Below, piece by piece: positions 11,020 through 48,440 of a stretch of 64,000 bases of DNA. The stretch is from contig NC_052157.1 of the NCBI RefSeq assembly GCF_902713615.1, positions 75,705,411 through 75,769,410 on the forward strand, written 5' to 3'. A program made the translations under genes and the position numbers. The notes beneath the pieces are model-generated. The model saw only the letters and a list, made by a program, of their open reading frames with translations, made no database searches and was not told where the DNA came from. Position 1 is the stretch's first letter. Each line of letters opens with the position of its first letter. Source of the DNA: Scyliorhinus canicula (lineage: Eukaryota).

Positions 11020-12440
11020 CTCTGATTTGAGTTGATTTCATTTGTTTTCGAAGTACAGTGAAAAGTATTTTTCTGTTGCCAAGGGAACGTACACAATGCA
11101 TTCATACTAGACAAAAAGAGAATAATCGACAGAGTGCGTTAACAAATGGTACATCGACAAACAGTTAATGGTTATAATGCGGAACAAGGGGCAAAACAAA
11201 GCAAATACACGAGCAAGAGCAGCATAGCGCGTTGTGAATATTGTTCTGACGGGGATCAGATCAGTCCGAGAGAGAGGCATTGAAAAGTCCAGTAGCTATG
11301 GGAAAGAAGATGTTCATATGTCTGGACGTGCGGGTCTTCAGACTTCTGTAACTTCTGTCTGATGGAATAATCTGGAGGAAGGCAAAGCCTGGGTGGGTGG
11401 AGTCTCTGGTCATGCTGCCTGCCTTCCTTAGGCAGTGGGAAGTGCAGACAAAATCAATGTGAGGGTATAAATATTGTGTGATGCGTTGGGTTGAGTTCTC
11501 CCTCATCTGCGGTTTCTTGGGACGTTGGGCGCAACAGTTGCCATACCAAATTGTGATGCAGTCCGAATGGATACTCTGGATGCTACATCTGGATACGTTG
11601 GCGAGAGTCGATGCAGACATGTCGAATTTCTTTAGCTTTTTTATGCAATAGGGACGTTGCTGAGCTTTCTTGACTGTTGCATCAAAGTGAGTGACCAGGA
11701 CAGAATGTTGGTGATAGTGACCCCTTGGAACCGCAGTCCATCGAGCATCTCGACTTCGGATCTTTTGATGCAGACAGGGGTGTGTTTGTGCTACGAGTTC
11801 TTAAGTCGATTACCAGTTCCACTTTCTTTCCAGCATTTAGGGAGAGGTTGTTTTCGTCACAGCATGCAACCAAGTTATCTATCTCCCGTCTGTATTCCGA
11901 TTTGTCGTTGTTTGAGATACGACCCGCCAGAGAGGTATCATCGGCAAACTTATAGATTGAGTTGGAGTTAAATCTTTCCACACAGTCGTGTGTGCATAGG
12001 GAGTACAGAGGAGGACTAAACACGCATCAGTGAGGGGCCCCGGTTTTGAGGACAATTGTGGAGGTGCTGTCGCCTATCCCGACAAATTGCGGTCTGTTGG
12101 AGAGGATTTCAGGGATCCAACTGCACAGGGAGGTGTCAAGTCCATGATTGCAGAGTTTGGTTATATGTCTTTTCGGGATAATTGTGTTAAAGGCAGAGCT
12201 ATAGCCGATGAACAGCAGTTCCACGTAGGTGACCTTGTTGTCGAGGTGTTCGAGTGTTGATTGTAGAGCTGGGGAGGAAGCATATGCTGTGGATGGACTG
12301 CGGTGATTGGCGAACTGCACTGGATCGAGACCCTCTGGGAGGCTGTCGTTGATCCGTATCATGACTAGCCGCTCGAAGCATTCAAGATAAAATACATCAG
12401 GGCCAATATCACCGTCGGTCCCCTTTCTCCAATGAATTTT
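11020..12440 (-). mobile_element. Rex1/Babar-type LINE, 5'-truncated RT region and 3' end
   Basis: ORFs with LDPVQFA...LFIGYSSAFNTIIP, TGAP, and SPPLYSLCTHDC...KFADDT...LSLNAGKKVELVIDLR, typical of Rex1/Babar RT. Confidence 0.85.
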
Positions 12441-12829
12441 CTGAACTTTGCTGTTTCAAGTCCAATGTTAACTTTTCACCCCCCCCCCCCCGCACAAGCC
12501 CCTGCAACGACAAGTAGGTGGCTGTTGGTGTATTGTGTAGTGGCTTCTACTTCAAAGAGGAATAGTGCCAACTCTCAGATCTTCCTCCTGCGTGTTTCCA
12601 CCTACTTTCTAGGACTGTCACTGATGTCGTCTGTGGATATCGACGTCAACACCTACAAAGCTCATTGTCTCCGAAACACATAAAGTACGTGTCTACTTCC
12701 TCCCCATAATGCGCATAAAGAACTGGCATGGGAGGAACGTCATATCAGCCTGTGCTTACAGCACTAAACTGGTAAATAATGATAATAATAACAAAATAAT
12801 TATATCACTATCTTGAATCCATCCACTCT

Positions 12830-13870
12830 CCTCTTCTCCAGTCACTTCCCGGAAAAAGGTTTCGCTGAGATGCGGTATGTCATATCAGCAGCCCATGCGC
12901 TAGCTGCGTTCTTTTTACAATGGACATCCAATGCTTCGTGCCGCAATGAATAACCAACCCTCGTACCTTAATTTCCCACGAGCATGATCCAAGGTCTCTC
13001 CGTTTCTTCTGCGAAAACTTACCTCAGCAATTCCAATTCACTACCCCTTCGTCCGTCTGGCTGAACATGTCATCTCATGAACAACTTTCCTTTAAATTGT
13101 CTTACTTCCTCCATATAAAGGCTGCCCCTTTGATTCCCAGTTTTGTCGGCGTTGCCTGGGTACGTGAATGGTTCCTTCTTCCAGTTCATTGCCCTCTTCC
13201 ATAGTTATTTGATCAATATATTGACGACTGTTCAGTTAAGGTTCATGCTGTCGCCTGCAAGTGGAAACATTTAGCAACTTGTTTTATAATTTTAGGAACG
13301 TTGGCACATTTAGGTAATATAGCTCCGACACGTGATATATTGCCAAACAGTATAAATTGAATGCCCACCGGCTCTTGTGGCTAGCTGGCCTAAAGCTCTT
13401 CATCCACCACATTTGATAGGGCTAAAGCCTATTGTCCGAGTTAGTGCCATCTCTTTCCGGTTTCAGGGTTGTCCTTTGATACATAACGGACCTTTTATCT
13501 GCCCGAATCCATCCTGATATCTTGATGTGTCACTAACAGCACCCATCTTAGCCAATATCACCGCCATATACAGTCCGTTATGTTTTTGTCCCCGACATCA
13601 CTGTCAATCATCATCCGCTCTCCATCCATCCACTGGCTCTCCCTTTAGATATACGGCTCCAACACCCTCATTTTCCACACACACCTCGCACAACATATGA
13701 ATGTGTCATCATCTGTCCTGTTTCAAGCTGACTTCTCTCTAACTCTGCTGAAGAATAGATCCGACTCGAAGTGTCGCTTGTGTTGTCTCTCTGCAGATTG
13801 TTTCGGAATTTTTGATATTGGCCAGCATGTCTGTTTTTCCTTCAGCTTCCAGAATCCGCAATATTTGTTT
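12830..13870 (+). mobile_element. Possible Penelope-like element relic
   Basis: Decayed coding-like stretch (cgtctggctgaacatgtcatctcatgaacaactttcctttaa, resembling RLAELVL..NNFSF) and a terminal segment resembling 10020-10145 and 51960-52110. Confidence 0.4.
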
Positions 13871-13919
13871 TTAGCTCCAGAAATGAAGATTCGATTGAGC
13901 AAAATGTCATCCTTCTAAG

Positions 13920-15200
13920 ACTGGGCGACTCTACCATTCTCCACTTGGAGAGGTCAGGATTGCTTAACGGTCGTCAGCATGGCTTTGCAGGAGAAAATCG
14001 TGCCTATCAAATTCGATTCCATTGCTTGAGGCGTTGACTACGTACGTAGGAGAGGGCAGTGCAGCTTATGTTGTACACATGCATTTCTGCAGCGTGTTTG
14101 ACAAAGCCCGTCACGTAAGATAGATCAACTAGCTTCTAGCCAATTTGATAAATGCAATTTGGCAAATTACTTCAAAAAATGGCTCGTGACGCGTATCAGG
14201 AAGATTTTGAAATGTGTTTTCTTTGTGTCTGGAATTCTGTATGTCACGATATTCAGCATGACTCGATGATGGGTCTCTTTTTCTTTTCATTGTCAATAGA
14301 TGATCTAGAAGTGAAAGTTGGAGGTGCGATTCATGAGCTCGCAGTTGATCCGGAAATTCCTGCTGTGGTAAATAACGAGGACCAAAGCCTCAGATTGCAA
14401 AAAGAGCGATCAATCAAATACGCGAAGAGTGGCAGATTGTTCTTCAGCCTGAAACGTGTGAGGTGAACTATTTTGGGAGGAGAGATAAGCAAGTAAATGC
14501 ACATTATCGGTCGGATGCCACGAAGTGCAGATGACCAAGGACTCTCGGGGTGGATGTCAAGAGAACCCTGAAGGGAGCATTAAAGTTGGTAATTTATTTA
14601 ATTAGACGTGGTGCATTGTTTAACTTTTTAGCCAAGGTACAGACCATATGTCTAGGGAGCTGGTGACGGTGATTGATAAAATATTTCTTACGGCACAGCT
14701 GGAGTACTGCGTGCCGTTCAGTCTCCACTCCATGGCGATATTTTATTGTACTGAAGGGAAGGCAGAGATGATTCACCTCCTTGAGTGGGCTCGGGATTTC
14801 AGCAGTGAAGAGAGGCTTGTCAAAATTTTGTTGTTTTCCAAAGAACATAAAAGTATGGCATAGTTAAGAAGGCCAGCGATAGTGGAGCAAAGAATAATTT
14901 GCTCCACTTAGATGGGGGTGCTACGACCGATGGGGTCAAATTTACGGGAAGCCCAGGAGAATTACAGGGATCTGAGGAAAACATCTTTACCATGAAGCAT
15001 GTTAGAAATCTATAACTGAATTCCTGAAAGACTAGTAGAGGTGGGAAACTTCACAACACGCAACACGCATTTGGATGGACATTTGAAAATCGATATCATC
15101 CAGAGCCCCGGGCGAAGTTTCGAAGGATGGGATAAGAATTAATGGGAGCTAGATGGCCAGCGCAGATACCATGTGCAGAATGGCCACATTCCGTGCTGAA
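13920..15200 (+). mobile_element. Old CR1 LINE RT/3' fragment
   Basis: Decayed CR1 motifs (IDDLEVKVGG, QLEYCVPFS) and a CR1-like 3' tail (gaatggcc...ccgtgctg). Confidence 0.7.
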
Positions 15201-15254
15201 AAATAATATTGCTCAATTAATATGACTTATTGACGAAACCGCCGCAGCCCTCTG

Positions 15255-16080
15255 GGACAGATGATTTGTCAGATGAGTCTGGTAACAGCCGGGAAGAAGC
15301 TGTTTTTGAGTGTGTTCGTGTGTGTTCTCAGGCTTGCATATCTCCTGCCCGATGGAAGCAGTTGGAAGAGTGAGGTAGCCGGATGGGAGGGGTCTTTTAT
15401 AATGCTGCCCGCTTTCCACAAGCAGCGTACGGTGTAGATGGATACAATGAGTGGCAGGCAGGTTAGTGTAATGGACTGGACAGTGTTTACGACACAACTT
15501 CCAGTCATGGGCCGAGCAGTTGCCATACTAGGGTGTGATGCAGACAGATAAGATGCTTTCTATGGTGCATTTGTAAAAGTTGGTCAGATTTAATGTGGAA
15601 ATGCCGAACTACCTTAGTTTCCTGAGGAATGTCATGCGCCATTGTGCTTTCTTGTTGTTAGCGTCGATGTGGGTGTGCCAGGTCTGAGTTTTAGTGATGT
15701 GCTCCCCTCGGAATACGTTAACCATATGCACCTCTGCCCCGATTATGCTGATAGGCTGTTTACAATAATTTGCTTTCTGAAGTCAATGACCATCTCTTTA
15801 CTTTTTCTGGCATTGATGGATAGAGTTTTGTCGTTGTACCATACCACTAGGTTCTCTATCTAAATCCTGTATTCTGACTCGTCGTTATTCGACATCAGCC
15901 CCACTATTGTCGTGTCTTCAGCAAACTTGTGGATGGAGTTGGAACCGAATTTTGCCACGCAATCGGGTGTGTACAGGAAATATAGTCGGGAGCTCGGTGC
16001 GCAGACTTCCGAGGCCCCGTTATTTAGCACTATTGTGAAGGAAATGTTGTTGCTTATTTTACTGATTGTGGTCTTTCCAC
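15255..16080 (-). mobile_element. Rex1/Babar-type LINE fragment
   Basis: LYTPDCVAKFGSNSIHKFAEDTTIVG and KAGSIIKDPSHP...LLPSGRRY...NSFFPAV, homologous to 11020-12440. Confidence 0.8.
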
Positions 16081-18709
16081 AACACCACCCACGTGTTAAT
16101 GAAGAAATGTCAGCTCGAAATGACCTGTCTTTACTCTGAGACTTCATCCCCTGGTTGTTGAAAACCCAAATACCCCACCGTACCATCCACCCATTCCCAT
16201 CCTGCCCACATCCATGAGAATCAATCCCAGTGAATCTTCCCTGCCGATACTTGTAATAATTCTGTATATCTGAATGAGATAGTCCAGCATTTCTTGAATA
16301 CCAAAACTTAAAGGTCCAGAATATTCTATCATTAATGATGGAAAGAACAGTGTACTTTTGCTTTCCCCGAAAATAAAGTCAACGCTCAATATTGCAAACG
16401 GTTGTTCGCAAAATGCTTTCAAGCAAAACAAAACGTAGCTGCATTTAATATTCGCAACGCGAACAGGGATTGGCAGGGACATTTCAAGTATCTACCTATT
16501 GGTGCATCCTCACAACATTTGTTCAACTTTTTCAAGCATGCATCATTATCTGAAGTTAAAGCAAAACAAGATGCTTCCGTAGTCAGTTATATAATACCTC
16601 AAGTACATAACACAGAAGAAGCAGCACCCACCAGCCTGGCTATTCTGGCGTATTCAAAGGGTTACCTCTCATGAACCACGTAGCCATCGATGAAAAAATA
16701 CATTTTCCCGTCAAATACTAATTCCCCGCTTCTGCCAAATTTTCAATCGGCCTCTGATTTCGGCAATATTCAAGCAGATTAATCTTCTCTATTTTTAACC
16801 ACAATTAGTTCCTTGACCTATTTCCCAATGCTTGAACACAACGATACACGTCCCTATGCCATTCACGTTGTTTGCACGTAGATCGCTTAATTACATTTCT
16901 GACTGAACTCCCCTCGTGGGATACTTAAATGTTTCCACAAAAGGCGCATCATCGCATTTACTTTAAGTTTAACGGCATGGCAGAAGCCTGAGTTCCATCT
17001 CTTACAATGCCGAATCTTCGCAATTCCAAAGTGACCAAATTGATTAAAATAGTAGCAGTGCAGTTTGAGTTGAAATCAGAGGCAAAGGTAACGGCAATAT
17101 TTTCTGTACAAATAATTGAAATGGCTTGTCTAGAGATCTGGAGGACTGGTTTGAATCACATCGCAGAACGTGGTATGTATTTAAATTTAAATTAGGAAAC
17201 AGAAATTAGAACTCGCATCTATGTTGGTAACCGTGAAACCAGCGTTCATTGATGCCCAAGCCAAAAGGTACCCTGCAGGGAAGCACATTTGCCCTTTTTT
17301 CTAATTTGCCCCACACATGGCTCTGTACCAACTTGATGCATTTGATAATATAGTTGTTGATTGACAATAAATTATGACCTTGTCCATGGTCACACACATA
17401 CGCCATTAAATTATGGTCTTTGTATTTTTTTCGATGTCAATGTTGCTGGTGTTCTATGAATCGAAATCCCTCTGATCCCACACCTCGTGGAATTCGTCTA
17501 TAATAATTCAGTCTGTTGTCCCGAGTGTAAATTAATGCAGAATGATATGGGTTTTTGTTCTTAATATTGAGGTTCTACATTTAAATTTAGCAAACAGTGC
17601 CTTGCTGAATATTGTCCTTCCGCTGTGCAGAAGCGTGCCAAACCCTAAGCACCGTGCAGACAACATAATGTATGCAGCCGGCTGCAGATATAATCATCGA
17701 TTCCCCCCTGGCCATGATATCAGCTAACATTATCCCTCAGGTTTTCAGTTGCATACCCATCCATTGAGAGGCCCCCGATTCGGTGTTGATAGGTCGAATA
17801 TATTGATGATTGTCCTCATTGTTCACATAGACATCTGTTTTTGAGCTACGAAAATGGCTAAGATTCTGCCAGACCTGCTGAAATTTTCCACCATTATCAC
17901 TTTTGGGATAAGATTCTGCGGTCTTTAATTCTGGATTACCAACCTGCCTTTCTCAGTCATGTACTTCTTTACCCAGCCACACTACAATACGGCTGGCACG
18001 AAACATGTGTGAGACACATTTTGGGATGTGTTGATCAAACTGTTGATGATTGTTTTCAAACCGGAATTCGTTGGCCTTGACATTCTAAAAGAGGTAGTCT
18101 AAACTTTCTTTCCCGACACAATCGTGGATCTACCACGATGGGCCCTTTATTAGCAACTGATTCGCACTGAAACTGCAATGGTAGAAATAGGCATCACGAC
18201 ACTGTTTTCACTACGTCCCTTAAATAATCTTCCACAAACCAATGACAAGATCTTCCACTACTTGGACTAAACATTTAAATTAATTGGTTCCAGCAGCAAA
18301 TGAGGAGAATTGGAAGTTAATATATGCAGCATGGCAATCACTGCACCGAAACCACCGCACCCCCACCACATCCGCCATCGACAGCTCCCATTTTTAATAT
18401 GAACGCTTACCTTTTCTTTCATTGGCCAGCTTATCCTCTGTTAACGTTGAGGTAAGAGGGAAGATGTTCATCGTCATGTGGATATTTTGGTGTTGCTCCG
18501 CGTTGCACCATTTCTTGTTGCAATCAACACACCTCAATTTTTTATGGCCAAATATATCTATGTGTTCTATATATATATACGAAAGGCTTATGGACACTGA
18601 TGTATCTCTGAATAAACCATGCATTATGTAAAAAGATACATGGTGATATATTGGCCTGAAAGTGCGCATGAGGTTTAACTGAGATTACACATATAAGTTT
18701 TCTTTCAAG

Positions 18710-20906
18710 TAATCTTTATTGACACAAGCAGGCTTACATTAACATTGCAATAAAGTTACTGTTGAAAGCTCCCAGTCGCAAATTCCGGCACCTGTTCGGG
18801 TGCACAGAGGGAAAATTCAGAATGTCTATATTTCCGAAAGCACGTCTTTCTGACTTGATGGAGGAAATCGGAGCAGCCGGAAAATTCCAGCGCAGACATG
18901 AGGAGAACATCCAGATTCCACGCAGACAGTGATCCAAGCCGGGAATCGAACCTGGGAGACTGGAGCTGAGAAGCAACAGAGAAGTCGATTATGAGAGTAA
19001 ACTTGCTCAGAATATGAAAACAGATAGTAAAAGTTTCCACAATATGTAAAATAAAAAAGAGTGGCTAAGGTAAATATTGGTCATTTCGAGGATACGAAGG
19101 GAGACTTTATAATGGCTGATGAGGAAATGGCTGAGGATCTGAACATGTTTTATTGGTCGGACTTCACAGTGGAAGACACGAATAACATACCAGTGACACA
19201 TACAAATGAGACTATGACAGGTGAGGATCTTGAGATGATTTTTATCACCAACGAGGTAGTGACGGGCAAGCTAATTTGGCTAACGGTAGACATGTCTTCT
19301 GGCCCTGATGGAATGCATCCCAGTGTGCTCAAATAGATGGCTAGGGAAATTGAAAATGCACTAGTGATACTTCACCAAAATTCACTAGACTCTGGCGTGG
19401 TACCGGCGGATTGGATATTAGGAAACGTGACACCACTGTTCAAAAAAGGAGGTAGCCAAGAAGTGGGTAATAATAGGCAAGTGAGCTTAACTTCGGTAGT
19501 AGGGAAGATGCTGGAATCTATCATCAAGGAAGAAATTGCGAGGCATCTGGGTGGAAATTGTCCCATTGGGCAGACGCAGCATGGGTTCATAAAGGGCAGA
19601 TCATGCCTAACTAATTTAGAGGAATTTTTTGATGACATTACCAGTGCGGTAGATAACGGGGGGCCAATGGATGTGGTATATCTGGATTTCCAGACAGTCT
19701 TTGACAAGGTGCCACACAAAAGGTTGCTGCATCAGATAAAGATGCCTGGCATGAAGGGTAATGTTGTAGCATGGATAGAAGATAGGTTCATTAAAAAAAG
19801 TAGAGTGGGGATTAATGTGTGTTTCTCCGGTTGGCAATCAGTAGCTACTGGTGTCCCTCAGGGATCAGTGTTGGACCCACAATTGTTCACAATTGACATA
19901 GATGATTTGGAGTTGGCGGCTTAGGGCAATGTGTCCACGTTTGCAGACGACACTAAGATGAGTGGGAAATGAAAAAATGCTGAGGATGCTGGAATTCTTC
20001 AGGATGATTTGGATAGGTAACGTGAATGGTCTGGGGCCTGGGAGATGGAATACAATGTTGACAAAAGTGAGGTTATCCATTTTGGTAGGAATAACAGCAA
20101 AATTAATTAGTATTTAAATGGCAAAATATTAAAACATGCTGCTGTGCAGAGAGACCTGAGTGTGCTAGTGCATGAGTCACAAATATTTGGTTTACAGGGG
20201 CAACAGTGTTTAAGAAGGCAAGTGGAATTTTGGCCTTCATTGCTAGAGGGATGCAGTTTAAGATTAGGGACGTTATTCTGCGATTGTATAAGGTGTTAGT
20301 GAGGCCACACTTACAGTATTGTGTTCAGTTTTGGTCGCCATACCTGAGAAAGGACGTACTGGCGCTGTAGGGTGTACAGAGGAGATTCACGAGATTAATC
20401 CCAGATCTGAAGGAGTCGGATTACGAGGAGAGGTTGCGTAGACTGGGACTTTACTCTTTGAAATTTAGAAGGGTAAGGTGGGAACTTATAGAAACATATA
20501 AAGTTATGAAGGGAATAGATAGGATAAATGCGGGCAGGTTGTTTCCGCTCGTGGGTGAAAGCAGAACTAGGGGGCATAGCCTCAAAATAAGTGGAAGTAG
20601 ATTTAGGACTGAGTTCCGGACGAACTTCTTCACCACACGGTTGCGAATCTATGAAATTCCTTCCCCAGTGAAGCAGTTGAGGCTCCTTGATTAAATGGTT
20701 TTAAGGTAAAGATAGATAGTTTTTTGAAGAATAAAGGGATTGAGGGTTATGGTGTTCGGGCCGCAAAGTGAAGCTGAGTCCACAAAAGTTCAGCTATGAT
20801 CTCATTGAGTGGCGGAGCAGGCTCGAGGGGCCAGATGGCCTACTCCTGCTTCTAATTACTATGTTTTTATGTTCTTAGGATACACACCATGCTGCCGTGC
20901 TGCCCA
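18710..20906 (-). mobile_element. SINE (minus strand) split by the CR1 insertion at ~18980-20878
   Basis: The SINE body runs to 'ggagctgagaagcaaca' at ~18979. The SINE head remnant 'ccatgctgccgtgctgccc' reappears at ~20887-20905. Confidence 0.7.
18980..20878 (+). mobile_element. CR1 LINE, 5'-truncated, ORF2 RT pseudogene
   Basis: GPDGMHP, NVTPLFKKG, QHGFIKGRSCLTNL, VYLDFQTVFDKVPH, GVPQGSVL, FADDTK; 3' tail (tatgttt)n. Confidence 0.92.
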
Positions 20907-23866: not shown

Positions 23867-26040
23867 CTGTTCCAGTAACATGTATGTTGTCAGAGAATTG
23901 ACGTAGTGCCTCGGTGAACATTGTCTCCATTCGTTTCTGGTGTTTTTGATTTGGTGCAAACCACACAGAGTGCAAAAGTGGGTCCACTGTGCCTAACGTG
24001 GGACCTGACTTGGACCTCGGAAATGTTTCTCATCCCAGACAGCTAACTCGCAGAGTTCAGTCACCCTCTCCACCAGCACCATCCACACACACGCTAGTGT
24101 AGTATTGACGTGTTGGACTAAATGTTTGCAGCAGAAAATAAAATCCAAATAATTTCTCGCCTTGAAACTTGACCGACACGAAACTGAGTGAGCGTCTGCA
24201 TCAGGAAGTGTGAAAAATGGGGGAATTTTGAACCAATTATATCCTATCTTAACTCCGATGAGTAAATACTTTGCTCACTCAGATCATGCAGCATTTGGAC
24301 CAGATTAGCTTCCTCTGCAAATGAAAAAGAAAAGGCCGGTCAATGTGTTTGATTGCAGCAGGTTAACAATGTCAGTGCTTTTTGGGGCGTGTATATTAAC
24401 ATACTATAATTATAGTGCTGTACATGACACAACACCCCAGCGGGAATTTTCCATCAATTTCAGTCAACATCCTGACTTGATAATATGTCGCCGGTCAAGA
24501 CATATTGTTTTTCACATCGCTTGATGTTTGCATGGCAAACGATTGGAATAATTCAGAGACATACACGGGTTACATGCTTTTGGAAAGTGGTGCATTAAAC
24601 ACCAAACCAAGTCACTGACAGGAAATGTTTGCAAGTATGTTGTTCTACCTCAAATAAAGATTCGTCTACTTGTTAGTTTGCAGAGTTTCTAAACGATATC
24701 AAGAATCTGGAGATAGCATGACGATATTAAGCTCAGGTAACAGAATGACACGAACACTTCAATCAACTTGGAAAATTATAGACGCTGTGATTTATTTCAA
24801 TTTAAAAATAAGCTGCATGCGATAAGTAGTTGATGTTGCAACAGAAGCGTGTAGCCCTGAGAACAATAATGGCCGCTTTTTTTTCAAACAAGTTTAGAGT
24901 AGGCAATTATTTTTATTTTTCCAATTAAGGGGCAATTTAGCGTGCCCAATCCACCTAACCTGGGACCTCGGCGCCGTGAGACAGCAGGGCTAAACCACTA
25001 TTCCACCGTGCTGCCCTTTGATGACCATTCATGATAACACTCAATGGCGGAGCAGACTCGAGGATCTGAAGGGCCTAGTACTGCCTATTTCCTGTATCTG
25101 TATTTCATGTAAGACAGCTTATCCAATTGCTTTCGTTTGTTTTATCGCAAGTAGCATGGTGTTTCACACTGTACAATATAATATTCGGTGCTTCCCCTGT
25201 ACGTTCCCCTAGAACGTAAACTGTGATCGCGCAATTGAACGCAGAGGTCACTGTCCAAATTCAATATGCCAGAGCTCACGAAGATGCTGGAAGCTCAGAA
25301 TTGAACACATATAGTGAGAAAACTGCAACCTCTATTTTAGCAGTGCAGAAATAAATGTGAGCTGAGTGATTTATGCAGTTCTGGTCAATGAAAAACGAGT
25401 GAACCCTGAACTATTTCCAATGATGTGAATGTGGAGTGCCGATGGTTTTTGCCAATGCAAAAAGCGCATGCTAACCTCTTTGTGATTGAAACAAGGAGAA
25501 TGATTATAAAACATGGACAGAACTCAGTTGTATTGTTTTTAATGTCGCGTGTCGTTTGTGGTATATGGAACCTAGTGCGCATGGACGAATACAATAGTGA
25601 AATTAGCAGGCATGCTTTTTTAAATTTACAGTATCCAATTATTTCCTTCGGATTAATGGGCAATTTAGTGAGACCAATCCAACCACCCTGCACACCGTGG
25701 CTTGTGGGTGTGAAACCCACGCAGGAACAGTCAGAATTGCAATCTCTACACGCACGGTGACCCGGGGTCGGGATTGAACCCGAGTCCTCAACACCCGTCG
25801 TCAGCACCATACTTGAAGAATAAACTGACCACGTTTTGAAGAACTCACCTTTCGCTTTAAGTTTCAGCTTGGCTTCTGTGTCAAGGCAAGATCGCTATGG
25901 TTACAGTGTGCAGGAATCTTGACTTTCTGTGGACGGGAAGCTGCTTTGTCCGTTTTACTTTCGTGGGTATTTCGATGTGATGCGAATATGTGTTTGTCAG
26001 TCAGTGCGAGTACGTTCATATGAATTAACACTCTGGGAAG

Positions 26041-26906
26041 TGTTTTTTAAATTCACCTATATGTTTTTAGAATTCCCTTTATACCAGCGAACCTTACGGG
26101 CCGATATTCTAAAAACCGCGAACAGGGAACTTCCTCCCTGACTCCAGTACAGGCCTCTGAGAGTGCTAGTCGGGTCAAACTCTCCTTTCAAGTTATCCCC
26201 CGGTATAACTCCTACCTTCACTGAAGAATTTTACTTACTTACCCCTTAATGGCATCGATGTCACGGGTCCTGCGTTCTTAAGGAAGTGAAGTAAGCTAAT
26301 AACCACTTTTTCAGGTTAAATTATTTTATTATTAACATACTCTTTCTATCTCATTAAATTAAAAACATTATTTACTTTTTGATGTTGTCTGGTTGGTTGG
26401 TGAGGCCTTCAGACTCTCTCTCTCTCTCTCTCTTTCACTTTCAAGCCTCCTGGTCTTCTCTCCTGGTGCAGTTTTCTCTTTTCCGGCTGCTGTGGCTCTT
26501 GCTGTCCTTCTTGCGTCTTCGGGTGCCGCTGGTGTTCTGCTCCTGGTGTCTTTGTTCTGCTTCTTGCCTCGTGGGGAGAAAAAGGGGAGGAGTCTGAAGT
26601 CCACGCTGGTTTCTTTGTTTCAGCTGTTCTGATCGGGACCTCTGATAAGGATCGGACTTCGGGTCTTAAAGGGGCAGTCCATCACAATTTTCCAACAACA
26701 CAAAGAGATTTTTTAAAACTTTTTTCTTTTGCCTTTTTCCTGCTGCAGGTTGTAATAACCATTCTGATAGACTGAAATTGCTGCCCACAGTTTCTGTGCC
26801 CTTCAGCTGCCACCAACCTCTTGTGGGATCTTTCCCTGCACTCTCCCCGATCAGATGTTGGCAGACCTCTATGTTTCAAATGACACATTCTGTATTTTCC
26901 AGAACA
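26041..26906 (-). repeat. 3' LTR (866 bp)
   Basis: Matches 30356-31221 (ORF translations identical at offset 4315). AATAAA on the minus strand at 26330-26325. Confidence 0.95.
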
Positions 26907-26915
26907 CCCCGTCTT
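26907..26915 (-). promoter_or_regulatory. Polypurine tract (AAGACGGGG) abutting the 3' LTR
   Basis: Minus strand reads ...tcAAGACGGGG|TGTTCTGG. Confidence 0.6.
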
Positions 26916-28207
26916 GACATTTGAAACATTACTATAATTTGGTTTATTGTCCCCCCATCCAATTGTACTAACCTACATCCCTGATCATTGTCATTTGTAT
27001 GCATATCACCGACCAGTGTCAATACGAGTCTTGTTTTCCGTTCCAGTCCAACTTGTTTTCCATTTCTGATTGGAATGTGGTAATTGTGATATCTTTTACC
27101 CCCCACTGATCCCCTAGTCTTATTAATTTAAAATGTTCAATTGATCCTGCTTGTATTCCTAACTTCCCCATTAATGTCTAACATTGTCGTGAATCATGTA
27201 AGTCTGCCAACCCCTGGTTTACATGAGAGAACATCTTTCTGACAACGTGTATATTTTTCATTTCAGCCTTTACAAAACCGCATTGAACCGTCTCTTTTTT
27301 TCTCTTCCCAAACAAATTCTCCCTATTGTTCTATACATAGTAAAATTTTTATCTTATCTTAACACCTTATTCATTACCTAACCAATAGACTGTGTGTTAC
27401 ACTTTACATATTTTCAACTGTTAACAATTTAATATCAATATCGAAACATCGCTTCTTGGCTTTTGGAACAATCATTATTACATACTAACTAACCCTCTAT
27501 TAAAACATTCACAGTTTAGAAATGCGGATCAAGTTATTTACCGACACACATACCCCCCTTCTCATATATATACAACAGTCCCTATCAATTTACATGAAAA
27601 TAAAAATTTTTTCTTATCAACGATTATAGCTCTTCAATGCAATATTGTTTTGTTGCATTGGTAACAATTTTCCCGCCGTAGTATCAAGCTACTGAAATTC
27701 TTAACCTATTATCATTGATCATATTGGGGTTCCTCGTCAGTCGCTGCTATCTGCTGCCGAGACCTTAATGATTCCACTGCGTAGTACATACCCCATGGAG
27801 ACCACAGATCATCCATCAACTAATGTCCAGTTAGAGATGTCTGACCGGGGGTTTCACTGTCCAGTTATAATTTGATATTCTAATTTGCATTTAATTCCCT
27901 CAAATTTGTAGCCAATTATATCATTAGTTTCCCCCCAATCCTGTCGAACAGATTCTTCTCTGGAGTGTAGTTCTCTTCCTTCTTGCGACCTGGTTTGTTA
28001 TTAATTTTTTCCACCTGAAAAAGCAAATGAACAGATCAAGGGTGGAGAGGGCCCTATTCTTTAATTCGGATTATCCCAGAAGTGCCCTCTCCAGGACTTC
28101 CGGATTCCTTTTGCCATCATTTCTTTTTGAACTGGTTTATATTCCATATCCTTGATGTAGTCAAGCCTCCTTCTGTCATTGCACCCCTGAGTGAGATTCG
28201 AAGAATC

Positions 28208-29875
28208 TCAAACTCCTCTGATGCTCACTGGGTCGTGTGTTTCAAGCGTGACACAATTTCTTTTGCTCCAGACACCATGCTTCTCTAATTCAATTGTATG
28301 TGTACCCAGAATCTGAACAATCTTGTCTTTACATTTTACAGTCTCGCGAATGATTTTCCCCGCAGTCTTAGTTGGTAACTTCACCCAAACTTCGTCTCCT
28401 ACTTGATAATTCCCAGATTCACTTGGGTCTCCTTGTCCCTGGGGGACAGAGGTTCCAAGGTTGCTATTAAGATCAAATACTATTCTTTCAATGTCTTTAT
28501 CCCAGCCTTTATTATTCTGATTCTTTATGATCCAATCCTTTACTTTTCTTACAGACCTCTCAGCCATTCCATTACTCTCAGGTGCATATTTCACGGCCCA
28601 ATTGATTGTTATTCCTCTGTCAGCACAAAAGTTAATAACAGTATTGTTTCTAAAGTGTGGCGCGTTGTCCATTCGGATCGATTCTGGTCTACCTCTGGAG
28701 GTCATCATTTCTGCCAATACCTTTTTGGTTGTGGCTCCATTTGCTTTGCTGGTTGCTCTAAGGTCAATTTCTCCCGTGCAGCTATCAGCTTTGACTAAAA
28801 AATACAAATTACCTTTGCTGCTTCTGGGAAAAAGTGGTCCTGCATAATCTAATGACCATTCCTGCATTGGTTTCTCAGTTTTTATGCTCCCATATGTTTT
28901 ATTTCCTCTCTGTCCTCCACAGGCCATACATCTCTCACATTTTCTCCTTACTGCAGTTAAATGTTGTCTCCAATAGGCTATTTTAAGTCCCAACTTCTTC
29001 AACTCCCTTGAGACTACAACATGACCCCCATGTCCTGTGGCTTCATGTACTTGCTTAATTATCATTTGATGGTCGGCTGCTGAGTTCCCAAGAGTCCCCA
29101 AGATTATTGTCCTAAGTCTGGCTAATTCATCCACTTCCTGATTCCCCTTACACAGTTCCCCAATTCCTCTCTTTGGTTTGACTATTTCCTCATTCTCGGA
29201 TGAGGATGATAATTCTTCCTGTCCCATCACAGGAGGCGCCATAATCCCAACTATGCCTTGTTCCTCTTCACTTTCTTGTGGTTCAACGAAATGATCGATA
29301 AACGCTTCTTTCTTATGTGTGGCAGATTGCTGAGGCCAATTTTCTTCCTGAAACAGACTTGGATCTGGGTATGGAAAATTGTATCCCGTTGGGAAATTTT
29401 CACAGGAGTCCGAATTCTCTCGGCTATCTGATTCTAGGCCTGATTCCTCGTCACTTTCCATTTCTAATGGTTCATTTTTCTGCAGTTGTTTTATATATTT
29501 GCCTACCACTTCAGAGTTAATTTTGTGTTTACTATGGATCTGTATTATTTCTGTCCTGTTTACTCCGTCAATGATTTTAATCAGTTTGGAACACACTTTG
29601 CCCACTTGAGCAGCTGCATGCTTCTGTCTGTGTCCAAATACGATTAGTGATTCAGCTCGCTTTTCAAATGCAAACTGACAAAGTGCTTTAAGGACCCTGA
29701 CTGAATCTGTATATTGCAGGGCTTTTGGCACTCTAACAAAGAGGGAGATATCTCCGTCTGGATACATATCTCCTGTCCAGGATTTCTTTTGCTCTTTTAA
29801 TTTCTTCCATTCCCTTTTCATTTCTACATTTCTCTTGACCGTATCCCAGGGCATGAGAATTACCCTAATTGCCAT
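28208..29875 (-). CDS. 555-aa protein: degenerate RNase H-like N-terminal domain + acidic insert + retroviral integrase (HHCC, D,D(35)E core, SH3-like C-terminus)
   Basis: Open frame 28208..29920. First ATG at 29875 in strong Kozak context (aaaATGg). H-X4-H-X30-C-X2-C (HEATGH...CERC). Core WSLDYAGPL...IRMDNAPHF...ESNGMAER with exactly 35 residues between the second D and E. YQVGDEVWVK C-terminal motif. YTDS and GNQEVDELAR are RNase H-like motifs. Confidence 0.92.
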   Translation of the reverse strand: MAIRVILMPWDTVKRNVEMKREWKKLKEQKKSWTGDMYPDGDISLFVRVPKALQYTDSVRVLKALCQFAFEKRAESLIVFGHRQKHAAAQVGKVCSKLIKIIDGVNRTEIIQIHSKHKINSEVVGKYIKQLQKNEPLEMESDEESGLESDSRENSDSCENFPTGYNFPYPDPSLFQEENWPQQSATHKKEAFIDHFVEPQESEEEQGIVGIMAPPVMGQEELSSSSENEEIVKPKRGIGELCKGNQEVDELARLRTIILGTLGNSAADHQMIIKQVHEATGHGGHVVVSRELKKLGLKIAYWRQHLTAVRRKCERCMACGGQRGNKTYGSIKTEKPMQEWSLDYAGPLFPRSSKGNLYFLVKADSCTGEIDLRATSKANGATTKKVLAEMMTSRGRPESIRMDNAPHFRNNTVINFCADRGITINWAVKYAPESNGMAERSVRKVKDWIIKNQNNKGWDKDIERIVFDLNSNLGTSVPQGQGDPSESGNYQVGDEVWVKLPTKTAGKIIRETVKCKDKIVQILGTHTIELEKHGVWSKRNCVTLETHDPVSIRGV

Positions 29876-30108
29876 TTTCGGATTTTTAGTTCTGTTCCTG
29901 GTTGTCCCTTTCAGGTGCACTCTGAAATTAAGGATAAGTACCCTTTCTGGGCCCTATCCAAGGCTGACCAAGGCACTATCTTCCTGCTCTAGTTAAGGGT
30001 CGATTGATTATTGGTTTCTGAATATAAGCGTCCCTATTTTCCAGAAAATGTCCGCACAATCCGCCTTACTCTGAGGATGATTTATTCTTTAGCCCCTACT
30101 CTGCTTAA

Positions 30109-30336
30109 CTAGAAACTTCTAATATTCTAGCCTCGCTTTACCTAGAAACTTCTAATATTCTAGCCTCGCTTTACCTAGAAACTTCTAATATTCTAGCCTC
30201 GCTTTACCTAGAAACTTCTAATATTCTAGGCTTTTCTTGGGAACTAGAAACTTCTAATATTCTAGCCCCTACTCCGCTTAACTAGAAACTTCTAATATTC
30301 TAGCCTCGCTTTACCTAGAAACTTCTAATATTCTAG
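30109..30336. repeat. Leader array: 7 copies of the 22-bp core CTAGAAACTTCTAATATTCTAG with 11-16-bp spacers
   Basis: Cores start at 30109, 30142, 30175, 30208, 30244, 30282 and 30315. Confidence 0.95.
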
Positions 30337-30337
30337 G

Positions 30338-30355
30338 CCTCCACGCTGGGCGCCA
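30338..30355 (-). promoter_or_regulatory. Primer-binding site, tRNA-Lys(1,2)-like
   Basis: Minus strand TGGCGCCCAGCGTGGAGG directly after the 5' LTR, versus canonical Lys1,2 PBS TGGCGCCCAACGTGGGGC. Confidence 0.85.
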
Positions 30356-31221
30356 TGTTTTTTAAATTCACCTATATGTTTTTAGAATTCCCTTTATACC
30401 AGCGAACCTTACGGGCCGATATTCTAAAAACCGCGAACAGGGAACTTCCTCCCTGACTCCAGTACAGGCCTCTGAGAGTGCTAGTCGGGTCAAACTCTCC
30501 TTTCAAGTTATCCCCCGGTATAACTCCTACCTTCACTGAAGAATTTTACTTACTTACCCCTTAATGGCATCGATGTCACGGGTCCTGCGTTCTTAAGGAA
30601 GTGAAGTAAGCTAATAACCACTTTTTCAGGTTAAATTATTTTATTATTAACATACTCTTTCTATCTCATTAAATTAAAAACATTATTTACTTTTTGATGT
30701 TGTCTGGTTGGTTGGTGAGGCCTTCAGACTCTCTCTCTCTCTCTCTCTTTCACTTTCAAGCCTCCTGGTCTTCTCTCCTGGTGCAGTTTTCTCTTTTCCG
30801 GCTGCTGTGGCTCTTGCTGTCCTTCTTGCGTCTTCGGGTGCCGCTGGTGTTCTGCTCCTGGTGTCTTTGTTCTGCTTCTTGCCTCGTGGGGAGAAAAAGG
30901 GGAGGAGTCTGAAGTCCACGCTGGTTTCTTTGTTTCAGCTGTTCTGATCGGGACCTCTGATAAGGATCGGACTTCGGGTCTTAAAGGGGCAGTCCATCAC
31001 AATTTTCCAACAACACAAAGAGATTTTTTAAAACTTTTTTCTTTTGCCTTTTTCCTGCTGCAGGTTGTAATAACCATTCTGATAGACTGAAATTGCTGCC
31101 CACAGTTTCTGTGCCCTTCAGCTGCCACCAACCTCTTGTGGGATCTTTCCCTGCACTCTCCCCGATCAGATGTTGGCAGACCTCTATGTTTCAAATGACA
31201 CATTCTGTATTTTCCAGAACA
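30356..31221 (-). repeat. 5' LTR (866 bp)
   Basis: Direct repeat of 26041-26906, followed on the minus strand by the PBS. Confidence 0.95.
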
Positions 31222-31449
31222 GAAGGTTCTGATCAAATATTATGTTTAGTGACTGTGATGAGCTGGTAAATTTAGAAATTCCCTATAGTTTCCCAGAAGT
31301 GGCTTTCGCTAGATCAAACGCCATGATGGGAGATTTGTTGAAGTAACGGAATTTTAGGACAAAAGTAAAATAAATGTGGTCAGCGGAATGGAAACATAAC
31401 AGCTGTCCAACCACAAGACCTACCATAGTAAACACGACAATGGTCCCAG

Positions 31450-39050: not shown

Positions 39051-39246
39051 CTTTCAAATTAACTTTTTACATTACACTTTTGAAAGATGGTTTTGTGTCA
39101 GATTATATTCAATTTCTCCTATACTGATTAATTAGCTTTTAAAAAAAACTTTATTGATCCCTTTGATCTGAAATCAAATTACAAATAGTATTTAAAACCA
39201 AATTAAGACAGTTATTATATCAACTTGAAAGTAGTAATATAAATTA

Positions 39247-39583
39247 GGACAGCACGGTAGCATTGTGGATAGCACAGTCGCTTCACAGCTCCAGGGTCCC
39301 AGGTTCGATTCTGGCTTGTGTCAATGTCTGTGCGGAGTCTGCACATCCTCCCCGCGTGTGCGTGGATTTCCTCTGGGTGCTGCGGTCTCCTCCCACAGTC
39401 ACAAAGATGTGCAGGTTAGATGGATTGGGCATGATAAATTGCCCTTAGTGTCCAAAATTGCCCTTACTGTTGGGTGGAGTTACTAGGTTATGGGGATAGG
39501 GTGAAGATGTGGACCTTGGGTAGGGTGCTCTTTCCCAGACTCGATGGGCCGAATGGCCTCCTTCTGCACTGTAAATTCTATGA
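39247..39583 (+). mobile_element. Full-length tRNA-derived SINE with CR1-like tail
   Basis: Head ggacagcacggtagcattgtgg, B-box ggttcgattc, tail gggccgaatggcctccttctgcactgtaaattctatg. Confidence 0.9.
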
Positions 39584-46271: not shown

Positions 46272-48440
46272 TTAAGAGGTTAACCTACACTCCATTATTC
46301 TACCCTAATCCATATACCTATCCAATACCCGCATGAAGTTCCCTAACGTTTCCGACTCAACTATTTCCACAGGCAGTGCATTCCATGTCCCACTACTCTC
46401 TGGGTAAAGAAACTACCTCTGACATCCCCTCTAGATCTTCTACCATTTATCTTAAATTTATGTCCCCTTGTAATGGTGTGTCCACCGGGGAAAAATCGCT
46501 GACTGTCTACTCTATCTATTCCCCTAATCATCTTATAAACCTCTATCAAGTCGCCCCTCATCCTTCTCCGTTCTAATGAGAAAAGGCCTCGCAGCCTCAA
46601 CCTTTCCTCGTATGACCTACTCTCCATTCCAGGCAACATCCTGGTAAATCTCTTTTGCACCTTTTCTAAAGCTTTGACATTCTTCCTAAAATGAGGCGAC
46701 CAGAACTGCACACAGTACTCCAAATGTGGCCTGACCAAGGTTTTGTACAGCTGCATCATCACCTCTCGGCTCTTAAATTCAATCCCTCTGCTAATGAACG
46801 CTAGCACACCATAGGCCTTCTTCACAGCTCTATCCACTTGAGTGGCAACTTTCAAAGATCTATGAACATAGACGCCAAGATCTGTCTGTTCCTCCACATT
46901 GCCTAGAACCCTACCGTTAACCCTGTATTCCGCATTCATGTGTGTCCTTCCAAAATGGACAACCTCACACTTGTCAGGGTTAAACTCCATCTGCCACTTC
47001 TCAGCCCAGCTCTGCATTCTATCTATGTGTCTTTGAAGCCGACAACAGCCCTCCTCACTATCCACAACTCCACCAATCTTCGTATCATCTGCAAATTTAC
47101 TGACCCACACTTCAACTCCCTCATCCAAGTCGTTAATGAAAATCACAAACAGCAGAGGAGCCAGAAGTGATCCCTGCCTCTACCGAGAGGGGCCTCACGG
47201 TAGCATGGTGGTTAGCATCAATGCTTCACAGCTCCAGGGTCCCAGGTTCGATTGCCGGCTGGGTCACTGTCTGTGTGGAGTCTGCACGTCCTCCCTGTGT
47301 GTGCGTGGGTTCCCTCCGGGTGCTCCGGTTTCCTCCCACAGTCCAAAGATGTGCGGGTTAGGTGGATTGGCCATGCTAAATTGCCCGTAGTGTAAGGTTA
47401 ATGGGGTATACGGGTTACGTGGGTTTAAGTAGGGTGATCATTGCTCGGCACAACATCGAGGGCCGAAGGGCCTGTTCTGTGCTGTACTGTTCTATCTATC
47501 TATGCGGTACGCCACTGATAACTGGGCTCCAGGCTGAATATTTGCCATCCACCACCAATCTCTGTCTTCTATCCGTTAGCCAGTTTGTTATCCAACTGGC
47601 CAAATTTCCCACTATCCCATGCCTCCTTACTTTCTGCACAAGCCTACAATGGGGAACCTTATCAAATGCCTTACTAAAATCCATGTACACTACATCCACT
47701 GCTTTACCTTCATCCACATGCTTGGTCACCTCCTCAAATAAGTCAATAAGACTTGTAAGGCAAGACCTATCCCTCATAAATCCGTGCTGACTATCCCTAA
47801 TAAAGCAGTGCCTTTCCAGATGCTCAGAAATCCTATCCCTCAGTACCCTTTCCCTTACTTTGCCAACCACCGAAGTAAGACTAACTGGCCTGTTATTCCC
47901 AGGGTTATCCCTATTCCCTTTTTTGAACAGGGGCACGGCATTCGCCACTCTCAAATCCTCTGGTACCACCCCTGTTGACAGCGAGGACGAAAAGATCATT
48001 GCCAACGGCTCTGCAAATTCATTTCTTGCTTCCCATAGAATCCTTGGATATATCCCGTCAGGCGCGGGGGACTTGTCTATCCTCAAGTTTTTCAAAACGC
48101 GCAACACATCTTCCTTCCTGACAAGTATCTCCTCGAGCTTATCAGTCTGTTCACACTGTCCTCTCCAACAATATGGCCCCTCTCGTTTGTAAATACTGAA
48201 GGAAAGTACTTGTTCAAGACCACTCCTATCTCTTCATACTCAATACACAATCTCCCGCTACTGTCCTTGATCGGATCTACCCTCGCTCTAGTCATTCTCA
48301 TATTTCTCACATATGTGTAAAAGGCCTTGGGGTTTCCTTGATCCTACCTGCCAAAGATTTTTCATGTCCTCTCTTAGCTCTCCTAATCCCTTTCTTCAGT
48401 TCCCTCCTGGCTATCTTGCATCCCTCAGCGCCCTGTCTGA
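46272..48440 (-). mobile_element. Young 5'-truncated CR1 LINE, RT region largely open, interrupted by a SINE
   Basis: ORFs 47496..48107 (PDGIYP...YMDFSKAFDKVPH...GVP) and 46361..47146 (INDL...KFADDTK...HLEYCVQFWSP). Confidence 0.95.
47178..47502 (+). mobile_element. SINE inserted into the CR1 GVPQGS motif
   Basis: Complete SINE with (tcta)n tail, flanked by tgc (47175-47177 and 47503-47505). Removing it restores the CR1 sequence gatccctgcggtac. Confidence 0.9.

What the first reader, a model, noticed from the sequence alone, without database searches (positions are those of the whole stretch)
26041..31221. Freshly inserted LTR retroelement that encodes an integrase but no RT, capsid, protease or env: candidate helper-dependent 'satellite' retrovirus with its own integrase
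Seen: 866-bp LTRs with no differences found by eye, perfect GAAG TSD, TGTT/AACA ends, Lys-type PBS, and only 3.45 kb of internal sequence. That interval holds one intact 555-aa ORF with full HHCC and D,D(35)E motifs; no YxDD RT, DTG protease, capsid or env ORF is visible. Established: non-autonomous LTR elements usually lose all ORFs or keep gag, and integrase normally enters particles as part of (Gag-)Pol. The HE..GHGG / YG.I...P..W.lDY.GPL pattern resembles class III (ERV-L/spuma-related) integrases, and a Lys1,2 PBS with 4-bp TSD is also foamy-like. Inference: matching LTRs plus a TSD imply recent reverse transcription and integration, probably in this reduced form. It would borrow RT and capsid from a helper while supplying a dedicated integrase for its own ends, or it may be one half of a bipartite element.
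Basis: partly seen in the sequence, partly recalled or inferred. Interest (0 to 1): 0.92.

Follow-up and report, generated by a model that had tools for sequence, protein, structure and literature searches.

The report
Recently inserted, internally deleted foamy-like provirus
This is a very young but defective copy of a foamy-virus-like endogenous retrovirus family of catsharks that lost its protease, reverse transcriptase and most of its gag-like gene through two internal deletions, leaving an open fusion frame that ends in an intact integrase; it is an ordinary kind of defective provirus rather than a new kind of 'satellite' retrovirus.

Summary
There are two 866-bp LTRs with 0 differences, a GAAG target duplication, TG..CA ends, a Lys-type PBS, 3,449 bp of internal sequence, and one open 555-codon frame with an intact integrase (element on the minus strand).

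Five related copies from Scyliorhinus canicula and S. torazame share the PBS, the leader repeat array, the frame's start and the integrase. Four of them carry the missing genes in between: a gag-like frame and protease-RT-RNase H. The best-preserved copy's Pol matches foamy-virus PR-RT structures at E 6.6e-84.

The window element differs from all four by two internal deletions. One junction has a perfect 9-nt microhomology, the other an imperfect 10-nt patch. Neither has GT..AG. This is the signature of template switching, not splicing.

The 555-aa frame is therefore a fusion of two gag-like pieces and the RNase H tail plus integrase. Against a catshark copy, the integrase part shows dN/dS 0.20 and the other two pieces about 0.9.

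No second copy with the same junctions was found, but the host genome could not be searched. The closest precedent is the mouse IAP I-delta-1 gag-pol fusion element. Own-integrase satellite: unproven and unlikely.

The parts
26037..26040 (.). Target-site duplication, left copy (GAAG)
   Evidence: Direct reading
26041..26906 (-). 3' LTR of the element (the element reads on the minus strand), 866 bp, TG..CA ends
   Evidence: 0 mismatches to the other LTR
26907..26915 (-). Short purine-rich stretch next to the 3' LTR (weak polypurine tract)
   Evidence: Direct reading. No second copy of it lies inside the integrase region.
26916..28207 (-). Non-coding stretch between the end of the frame and the 3' LTR; no env-sized frame
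   Evidence: Longest minus-strand frame here is 76 aa. It aligns to the post-pol stretch of the relatives at 68-90%.
28208..29875 (-). Open 555-codon fusion frame (plus stop). It joins two pieces of the family's gag-position frames to the RNase H tail and the whole integrase. What remains of the broken gag-like and pol genes is given here as one part.
   Evidence: There are no stops or frameshifts in the retained pieces.
28919..29071 (-). Integrase zinc-binding N-terminal domain (His, His, Cys-x2-Cys present)
   Evidence: Pfam Integrase_H2C2 is weak (E 0.031). The region aligns to the PFV integrase N-terminal domain, and the residues are conserved in L001 and L002.
28580..28876 (-). Integrase catalytic core (D, D-35-E present)
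   Evidence: Pfam rve E 1.1e-10, 42.1 bits against a cutoff of 32.6. PFV integrase is the best PDB match, E 7.7e-15.
29876..30104 (-). Unique part of the 5' leader between the repeat array and the start codon
   Evidence: Aligns at 92% to the leader of the S. canicula copies
30105..30341 (-). Tandem array of 33-nt units (6.9 copies) in the leader. Each unit has a 22-nt core holding a 6-bp inverted repeat.
   Evidence: TRF. The same core occurs in arrays of 5.7 and 4.7 units in L001 and L005. RNA fold z = -5.15.
30338..30355 (-). Primer-binding site, Lys-type
   Evidence: 16 of 18 matches to the foamy-virus tRNA-Lys PBS string in PMC4261875. The identical 18-mer is present in L001.
30356..31221 (-). 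5' LTR, 866 bp
31222..31225 (.). Target-site duplication, right copy (GAAG)
   Evidence: Direct reading

Best explanation
The element is a defective, internally deleted provirus of an env-less, foamy-virus-like endogenous retrovirus family. So far that family has been seen only in Scyliorhinus catsharks. A genomic RNA of the family was reverse-transcribed and integrated recently, which gave two identical LTRs and a 4-bp target duplication.

The polymerase jumped twice between short matching stretches of the template, either in that round of reverse transcription or in that of a recent parent. The jumps removed a macrodomain-like part of the gag-position frame and, separately, the rest of that frame together with protease, RT and most of RNase H.

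Both joins happen to keep the reading frame. The result is one 555-aa fusion frame: two gag-like pieces followed by the RNase H tail and a complete integrase. The integrase looks intact because the copy is young and descends from replicating parents. There is no evidence that the element needs or uses it.

Shown: the anatomy, the relationship to longer copies, the junction signature and the selection pattern. Inferred: when the deletions happened, and that the proteins for this insertion came from full-length family members.
For: - **Insertion:** identical 866-bp LTRs, TSD and PBS.
- **Relatives:** four full-type copies (L001, L002, L003, L005) share the leader array, the frame's start, the middle piece, the integrase and the post-pol stretch at 84-96%. 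All four carry extra sequence at the same two points. By L002 the extra stretches are about 0.7 kb and about 3.6 kb.
- **Missing genes:** L002 has an open 989-aa Pol frame with RT, RNase H and rve. Its best PDB matches are foamy-virus PR-RT-RNase H chains at E 6.6e-84, against 1e-42 for Ty3. The window keeps only the last 320 residues of that frame, at 94% identity.
- **Junctions:** one has a perfect 9-nt microhomology (chance about 4e-6). The other is a 10-nt patch matching at 7 of 10 positions. No crossover point allows GT..AG. Large internal deletions from aberrant strand transfer are a common way proviruses become defective (PMC12657518).
- **Selection:** dS is about 0.10 in all three pieces against L001. 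dN/dS is 0.20 in the integrase part (p = 6e-6 against neutrality), and 0.88 and 0.95 in the other two pieces.
- **Age:** zero LTR differences put the insertion under about 3.5 Myr (95% bound) at the rate assumed for S. canicula in PMC10699275. That leaves little time for two large clean deletions after insertion. The LTR pairs of L002 and L005 are 96-98% identical.
Against: - Both junctions keep the frame (1 in 9 by chance), and this is the youngest copy sampled. In mouse IAP elements the same pattern marks a successful non-autonomous subtype (PMC6466679).
- A second RT-less, integrase-retaining derivative exists in S. torazame (L004). It has a different single deletion, also in frame. Retention of the 3' pol region may therefore not be random.
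- The LTRs match those of the sampled relatives only at their ends, at 72-87%. The direct parent lineage has not been seen.
- The host genome could not be searched, so the copy number of this form is unknown.
Confidence: 0.7

Rival explanations
1. The element belongs to a propagating non-autonomous subfamily. The reduced form is copied repeatedly with capsid and RT borrowed from full-length relatives. Its fusion protein, with a working integrase, helps its own insertion, much as the mouse IAP I-delta-1 gag-pol fusion acts in cis.
For: - The two junctions are in frame and the integrase motifs are intact.
- It is the youngest copy among six sampled.
- An independent RT-less, integrase-retaining derivative exists in S. 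torazame.
- There is precedent in IAP I-delta-1 (PMC6466679).
- PBS, leader array and polypurine stretch are kept.
Against: - No second copy with these junctions was found in five relatives, or in protein searches with the whole frame, the integrase part and a junction-spanning piece.
- The gag-derived pieces evolve at dN/dS about 0.9.
- The low dN/dS of the integrase is measured against a full-type copy, so it reflects life inside a full Pol.
- The other derivative (L004) lost the first zinc-binding His and is decayed. That argues against integrase function being the thing retained.
Confidence: 0.18
2. A full-length provirus inserted here and lost the two stretches afterwards, through replication slippage or microhomology-mediated repair in the host chromosome.
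For: Microhomology at deletion junctions is also the signature of chromosomal deletion. A single locus cannot separate the two routes.
Against: Zero differences in 2 x 866 bp of LTR limit the time available. Two independent large deletions, both in frame and with no other damage in 3.4 kb, would have had to occur in that interval.
Confidence: 0.09
3. The provirus was copied from a doubly spliced subgenomic RNA, so the missing stretches are introns.
For: Foamy viruses express Pol from a spliced RNA (PMC5035957). NCBI gene models in S. canicula splice within this family's copies.
Against: No possible crossover at either junction leaves GT..AG or GC..AG in L001, L002, L003 or L005, and one junction has 9 nt of perfect microhomology.
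Confidence: 0.03

Closest known systems
Mouse IAP I-delta-1 proviruses
   Same: An internally deleted provirus whose deletion creates a new in-frame gag-pol fusion frame. It is non-autonomous, yet it accounts for most new insertions, and the fusion protein is reported to act in cis (PMC6466679).
   Different: IAP is class II (betaretrovirus-like) with a single 1.9-kb deletion and many copies. Here the family is foamy-like (class III), there are two deletions, all of RT and protease are gone, only the integrase survives, and only one copy is known.
Foamy-like endogenous retroviruses of fishes and sharks (FLERVs; ERV-Spuma.0-Sca of S. canicula)
   Same: Pol of the family is closest to foamy-virus Pol. 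The PBS is Lys-type, as in most foamy viruses and fish FLERVs (PMC5512871, PMC4261875). Spuma-like ERVs are already reported in S. canicula (PMC10699275).
   Different: No env-sized or accessory frame follows pol in the window element or in L002. The gag-position frame carries a macrodomain-like stretch in the relatives. I could not test whether this family is the published ERV-Spuma.0-Sca.
Defective proviruses with large internal deletions from aberrant strand transfer (best documented for HIV-1)
   Same: [quoted passage not shown]
   Different: Those are somatic proviruses of an exogenous virus. This one is fixed or segregating in a germ line.
ETn/MusD, VL30 and MaLR non-autonomous LTR elements
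   Same: They share LTRs and cis signals with, or depend on, autonomous relatives (PMC6466679).
   Different: Those have no retroviral coding capacity or only traces of it. This element keeps an open integrase-bearing frame.
Foamy-virus cis-acting sequence CAS-II
   Same: In foamy viruses about 1.8 kb of RNA encoding the C-terminal part of Pol is needed in cis for genome and Pol packaging (PMC5035957). That would explain why two independent derivatives keep the 5' end and the integrase-coding region.
   Different: This is an analogy only. No copy of the 3' polypurine tract lies in the integrase region here, and no conserved RNA structure was tested.

Membership tests
Foamy-like (spuma-related, class III) endogenous retrovirus | Pol/integrase closest to foamy-virus Pol | tested here: met
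   For the window integrase, PFV integrase is the best PDB match at E 7.7e-15, with the next genus at 1e-4. For the relative L002's Pol, foamy PR-RT-RNase H chains score E 6.6e-84 against 1e-42 for Ty3 and 1e-28 for gammaretroviral RT. No formal phylogeny was built.
Foamy-like (spuma-related, class III) endogenous retrovirus | tRNA-Lys primer-binding site | tested here: inconclusive
   16 of 18 matches to the foamy-virus Lys PBS string printed in PMC4261875. No shark tRNA-Lys was at hand: ARAGORN found no tRNA in the window.
Foamy-like (spuma-related, class III) endogenous retrovirus | 4-bp target-site duplication | tested here: met
   GAAG on both sides. That foamy-virus integration makes 4-bp duplications is established knowledge, not tested here.
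Foamy-like (spuma-related, class III) endogenous retrovirus | env and accessory genes 3' of pol | tested here: not met
   No frame over 76 aa lies between the integrase stop and the 3' LTR in the window. L002 has none of 100 aa or more on the sense strand there. The family behaves as env-less.
Non-autonomous LTR retroelement mobilised in trans (IAP I-delta-1 / ETn type) | Lacks RT and protease but keeps LTRs, PBS, leader and polypurine tract of an autonomous family | tested here: met
   However, the LTRs align to the sampled full-type copies only at their ends, at 72-87%.
Non-autonomous LTR retroelement mobilised in trans (IAP I-delta-1 / ETn type) | Several copies with the same internal structure at different sites | tested here: inconclusive
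   None of five relatives shares the junctions. No identical or junction-spanning protein is on record. The host genome itself could not be searched.
Non-autonomous LTR retroelement mobilised in trans (IAP I-delta-1 / ETn type) | Coding-competent helper in the same genome | not testable with these tools
   The host species of the window is unknown. L002 in S. canicula has an open Pol frame, but it is an old copy with a LINE nested in its leader.
Provirus derived from spliced RNA | Missing stretches bounded by GT..AG in unspliced relatives | tested here: not met
   No GT..AG or GC..AG is possible at either junction in any reference.
TRIM / LARD type non-coding LTR elements | No protein-coding capacity | tested here: not met
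   An open 555-aa frame with an integrase is present.
Domesticated integrase gene of the host | No LTRs or target duplication; conserved single-copy locus | tested here: not met
   Identical LTRs, TSD and PBS. Orthology across species could not be tested.

The most novel reading that the evidence does not exclude
The reduced form is a successful non-autonomous subtype of a recently active shark foamy-like retroelement. It would be copied many times with borrowed capsid and RT. It would keep the 5' end and the integrase-coding region because that RNA is needed in cis, as CAS-II is in foamy viruses, because the gag-integrase fusion protein favours its own insertion, or for both reasons. That would be a class III counterpart of mouse IAP I-delta-1, in a cartilaginous fish.
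Probability: 0.18. Interest if true: 0.6.

Novelty: new member of a known kind. Interest (0 to 1): 0.33.

Why it matters
As it stands this is an ordinary defective provirus, but it is useful in three ways.
- With no LTR differences, it shows that a foamy-like retroelement family was active in a catshark lineage within roughly the last few million years. Published shark foamy-like ERVs are treated as old relics.
- Together with the independent S. torazame derivative, it suggests that in this family the 5' end and the integrase-coding region tend to survive deletion. That can be tested by simple counting in shark genomes, and it bears on whether the foamy-virus need for a cis element in 3' pol is ancient.
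- Its longer relatives appear to carry a macrodomain-like segment in the gag-position frame. I found no report of this for a retrovirus.

Tried and rejected
- **Spliced-RNA origin:** rejected, with no GT..AG at either junction in four references.
- **Host-gene capture for the N-terminal part:** rejected. The same module opens the first frame right after the leader in all relatives. It occurs only in Scyliorhinus proteins that map to copies of this family.
- **Structure prediction:** the whole frame gave pLDDT 38 and the S. torazame macro-like protein gave pLDDT 33. Both are too poor for a fold search, so none was run.
- **Exact-protein look-ups:** the 555-aa and 570-aa versions are not on record.
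- **Protein searches:** the whole frame, the integrase part and a junction-spanning 151-aa piece found no protein with the same architecture.
- **Central polypurine tract:** no second copy of the 3' tract lies in the integrase region.
- **Rfam scan of the element:** nothing.
- **tRNA scan of the window:** nothing, so the PBS could not be compared with a shark tRNA.
- **Other copies in the window:** no solo LTRs or family fragments. The other RT fragments in the window are unrelated to this family.
- **Host species:** not identified. The element is about as far from the S. canicula copies (about 90-92%) as from the S. torazame copies (about 84-91%).


Full report
**Observation**

The window holds a complete LTR element at 26041-31221. 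The two LTRs (26041-26906 and 30356-31221) are 866 bp each and identical, and the identity stops exactly at both ends. GAAG flanks both sides, and each LTR begins TGTT and ends AACA.

The element reads on the minus strand. In that orientation the order is:
- 5' LTR, 30356-31221.
- An 18-nt primer-binding site, 30338-30355.
- A leader with 6.9 tandem 33-nt units, 30105-30341.
- One open frame, 29875..28208, of 555 aa from its ATG.
- About 1.3 kb without any frame longer than 76 aa.
- A short purine-rich stretch.
- 3' LTR.

The PBS matches 16 of 18 positions of the tRNA-Lys PBS string that PMC4261875 prints for mammalian foamy viruses. Pfam finds the integrase core above its cutoff and a weak zinc-binding domain. 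The zinc-binding His/His/Cys/Cys residues and the D, D-35-E triad can be read directly.

**What the frame is**

Among solved structures, prototype foamy virus integrase is by far the best match (E 7.7e-15, covering the N-terminal and core domains). The next retroviral genus scores 1e-4.

The first ~235 aa have no Pfam family. A full HMMER scan of 1.84 billion representative proteins found only five hits. Four are Scyliorhinus canicula or S. torazame proteins, and the fifth is a low-complexity match.

Fetching the loci of those proteins gave five related elements: L001 and L002 (S. canicula), and L003, L004 and L005 (S. torazame).

**Relatives**

L001, L002, L003 and L005 are full-type copies. 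They share several features with the window element:
- The leader array.
- In L001, the identical PBS 18-mer.
- The start of the first frame, a short acidic middle piece, the integrase, and the stretch between pol and the 3' LTR. Identity is 84-96% in coding parts and lower in non-coding parts.

Between these shared blocks all four carry sequence that the window element lacks.

L002 is the best preserved. It has three frames:
- A 342-aa first frame (N-terminal module plus a weak Macro match).
- A 632-aa frame with no Pfam family.
- An open 989-aa Pol frame with RT, a tether, RNase H and the integrase core.

Its best solved-structure matches are foamy-virus protease-RT-RNase H chains at E 6.6e-84, far ahead of Ty3 (1e-42) and gammaretroviral RT (1e-28). 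No env-sized frame follows pol.

The family is therefore foamy-like by Pol and apparently env-less. Spuma-like ERVs in S. canicula have been published (PMC10699275). I could not test whether this is the same lineage.

**State of the genes (counts only)**

| Copy | Pol | Gag-position frames | Other |
|---|---|---|---|
| Window element | Protease, RT and most of RNase H lost in the second deletion | Part lost in the first deletion, the rest in the second | Two deletions in all; no stops or frameshifts in what remains |
| L001 | 1 frameshift, 1 stop | At least 2 frame changes | One nested hAT transposon |
| L002 | Open | Split over two frames | One LINE nested in the leader |
| L003 | 3 frame changes, 3 stops | Further breaks | Assembly gaps |
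| L005 | 4 frame changes, 5 stops | Further breaks | |
| L004 | 1 stop; one deletion of about 3 kb removed protease, RT and RNase H | 1 stop | |

**How the reduced form arose**

Measured against L002, the window element lacks about 0.7 kb and about 3.6 kb. One junction shows a perfect 9-nt microhomology in both S. canicula references, with a chance probability of about 4e-6. The other is a 10-nt patch with 7 matching positions.

At no possible crossover point would the missing stretch begin GT (or GC) and end AG, in any of the references. This fits polymerase template switching or microhomology-mediated deletion and argues against splicing. Large internal deletions from aberrant strand transfer are a common way for proviruses to become defective (PMC12657518).

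The LTRs have no differences in 866 bp. At the rate assumed for S. canicula in PMC10699275, the insertion is under about 3.5 Myr old (95% bound). Two clean large deletions after insertion within that time are less likely than deletions made during reverse transcription. For comparison, the LTR pairs of L002 and L005 are 96-98% identical.

**Selection**

Against L001, dS is about 0.10 in all three pieces of the frame.

| Piece of the frame | dN/dS | Fisher test against neutrality |
|---|---|---|
| Integrase part | 0.20 | p = 6e-6 |
| N-terminal piece | 0.88 | not different from 1 |
| Middle piece | 0.95 | not different from 1 |

The comparison is with a full-type copy. The constraint on the integrase is therefore what one expects from descent through replicating, Pol-encoding parents. 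It says nothing about selection in the reduced form.

**Does it have its own life?**

Points for:
- Both junctions keep the frame (1 in 9 by chance).
- It is the youngest of the six copies seen.
- L004 is an independent derivative with a different single deletion that also removes RT and also runs in frame into the integrase.
- The mouse IAP I-delta-1 subtype shows that such a fusion form can out-compete its parents (PMC6466679).

Points against:
- No other copy with these junctions turned up in the five loci or in three protein searches, one of them with a junction-spanning piece.
- The exact protein is not on record.
- L004 lost the first zinc-binding His at its junction and is decayed. Integrase function is therefore not what that derivative retains.

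A plausible reason for sparing the 5' end and the integrase-coding region comes from foamy viruses, which need about 1.8 kb of RNA in 3' pol in cis (CAS-II; PMC5035957). This is analogy only. I found no second copy of the polypurine tract in that region.

The host genome could not be searched with the tools at hand, so copy number remains the open point.

**Verdict**

The element is a real, very young, internally deleted provirus of a foamy-like catshark ERV family. It is a new member of a known kind (defective or non-autonomous deleted ERV with a gag-pol fusion frame). The reading as a satellite retrovirus with a dedicated integrase, or as half of a bipartite element, is not supported, although a propagating non-autonomous subtype is not excluded (about 0.18).

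- In my reasoning I briefly recalled a PBS string from memory. No remembered letters went into any tool. The comparison used the string printed in PMC4261875.
- The alignment tool printed consensus lines by itself.

Noticed in passing
L004:732-1241, L001:10764-11282, L002:10091-10558 (absent from the window element): The gag-position frame of the family's longer copies holds a ~150-aa macrodomain-like stretch. Pfam Macro scores E 0.003-0.005, below its cutoff, in four copies. A three-copy profile against the PDB returns almost only macrodomains (bacterial, PARP14, alphavirus nsP3, coronavirus Mac1), with a best E of 7e-4. UniRef names the S. torazame protein 'Macro domain-containing'. The AF2 model was too poor to confirm it. 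One full-text search (macrodomain + endogenous retrovirus + gag) returned no title or abstract about such a case; the papers were not read.
   Followed up: partly
window 30105-30341; L001:9376-9572; L005:4408-4571: A tandem array of 33-34-nt units sits directly 3' of the PBS, with 6.9, 5.7 and 4.7 copies in the three elements. A 22-nt core with a 6-bp inverted repeat is the same in both catshark species, while the spacer varies. The predicted RNA fold has z = -5.15. It may be a packaging, dimerisation or protein-binding signal; this was not tested.
   Followed up: partly
L004 (S. torazame BFAA01026790.1), whole 6.4-kb contig: This is an independent derivative of the same family. It lacks protease, RT and RNase H through one different deletion, is also in frame into the integrase, has lost the first zinc-binding His, and is decayed by stops.
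   Followed up: partly
L002:5420-9360 and L001:~12200-16100: The older relatives carry nested insertions. L002 has an opposite-strand LINE (GDSL-esterase frame plus RT) in its leader. L001 has an opposite-strand hAT transposon (dimerisation domain, DUF4371) in its gag-like region.
   Followed up: partly
window 19337-19924 (+) and 46361-48107 (-): These are RT fragments unrelated to the element's family (Pfam RVT_1; no match to the family's Pol). The second is about 76% identical to the LINE nested in L002.
   Followed up: partly
window 8975-9320 and about 39242-39583: A dispersed repeat of about 345 bp is also present in L002, L003 and L005 at 82-92% identity. It is probably a SINE-like repeat of catshark genomes.
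   Followed up: no
window 30729-30751 and 26414-26436 (inside both LTRs): A (GA)n microsatellite of about 23 nt lies inside each LTR.
   Followed up: no
L001:10001-11562 and L002:10001-15144: NCBI gene models in S. canicula (LOC119967918, LOC119963594) are spliced models laid over copies of this ERV family. They are not ordinary host genes.
   Followed up: partly
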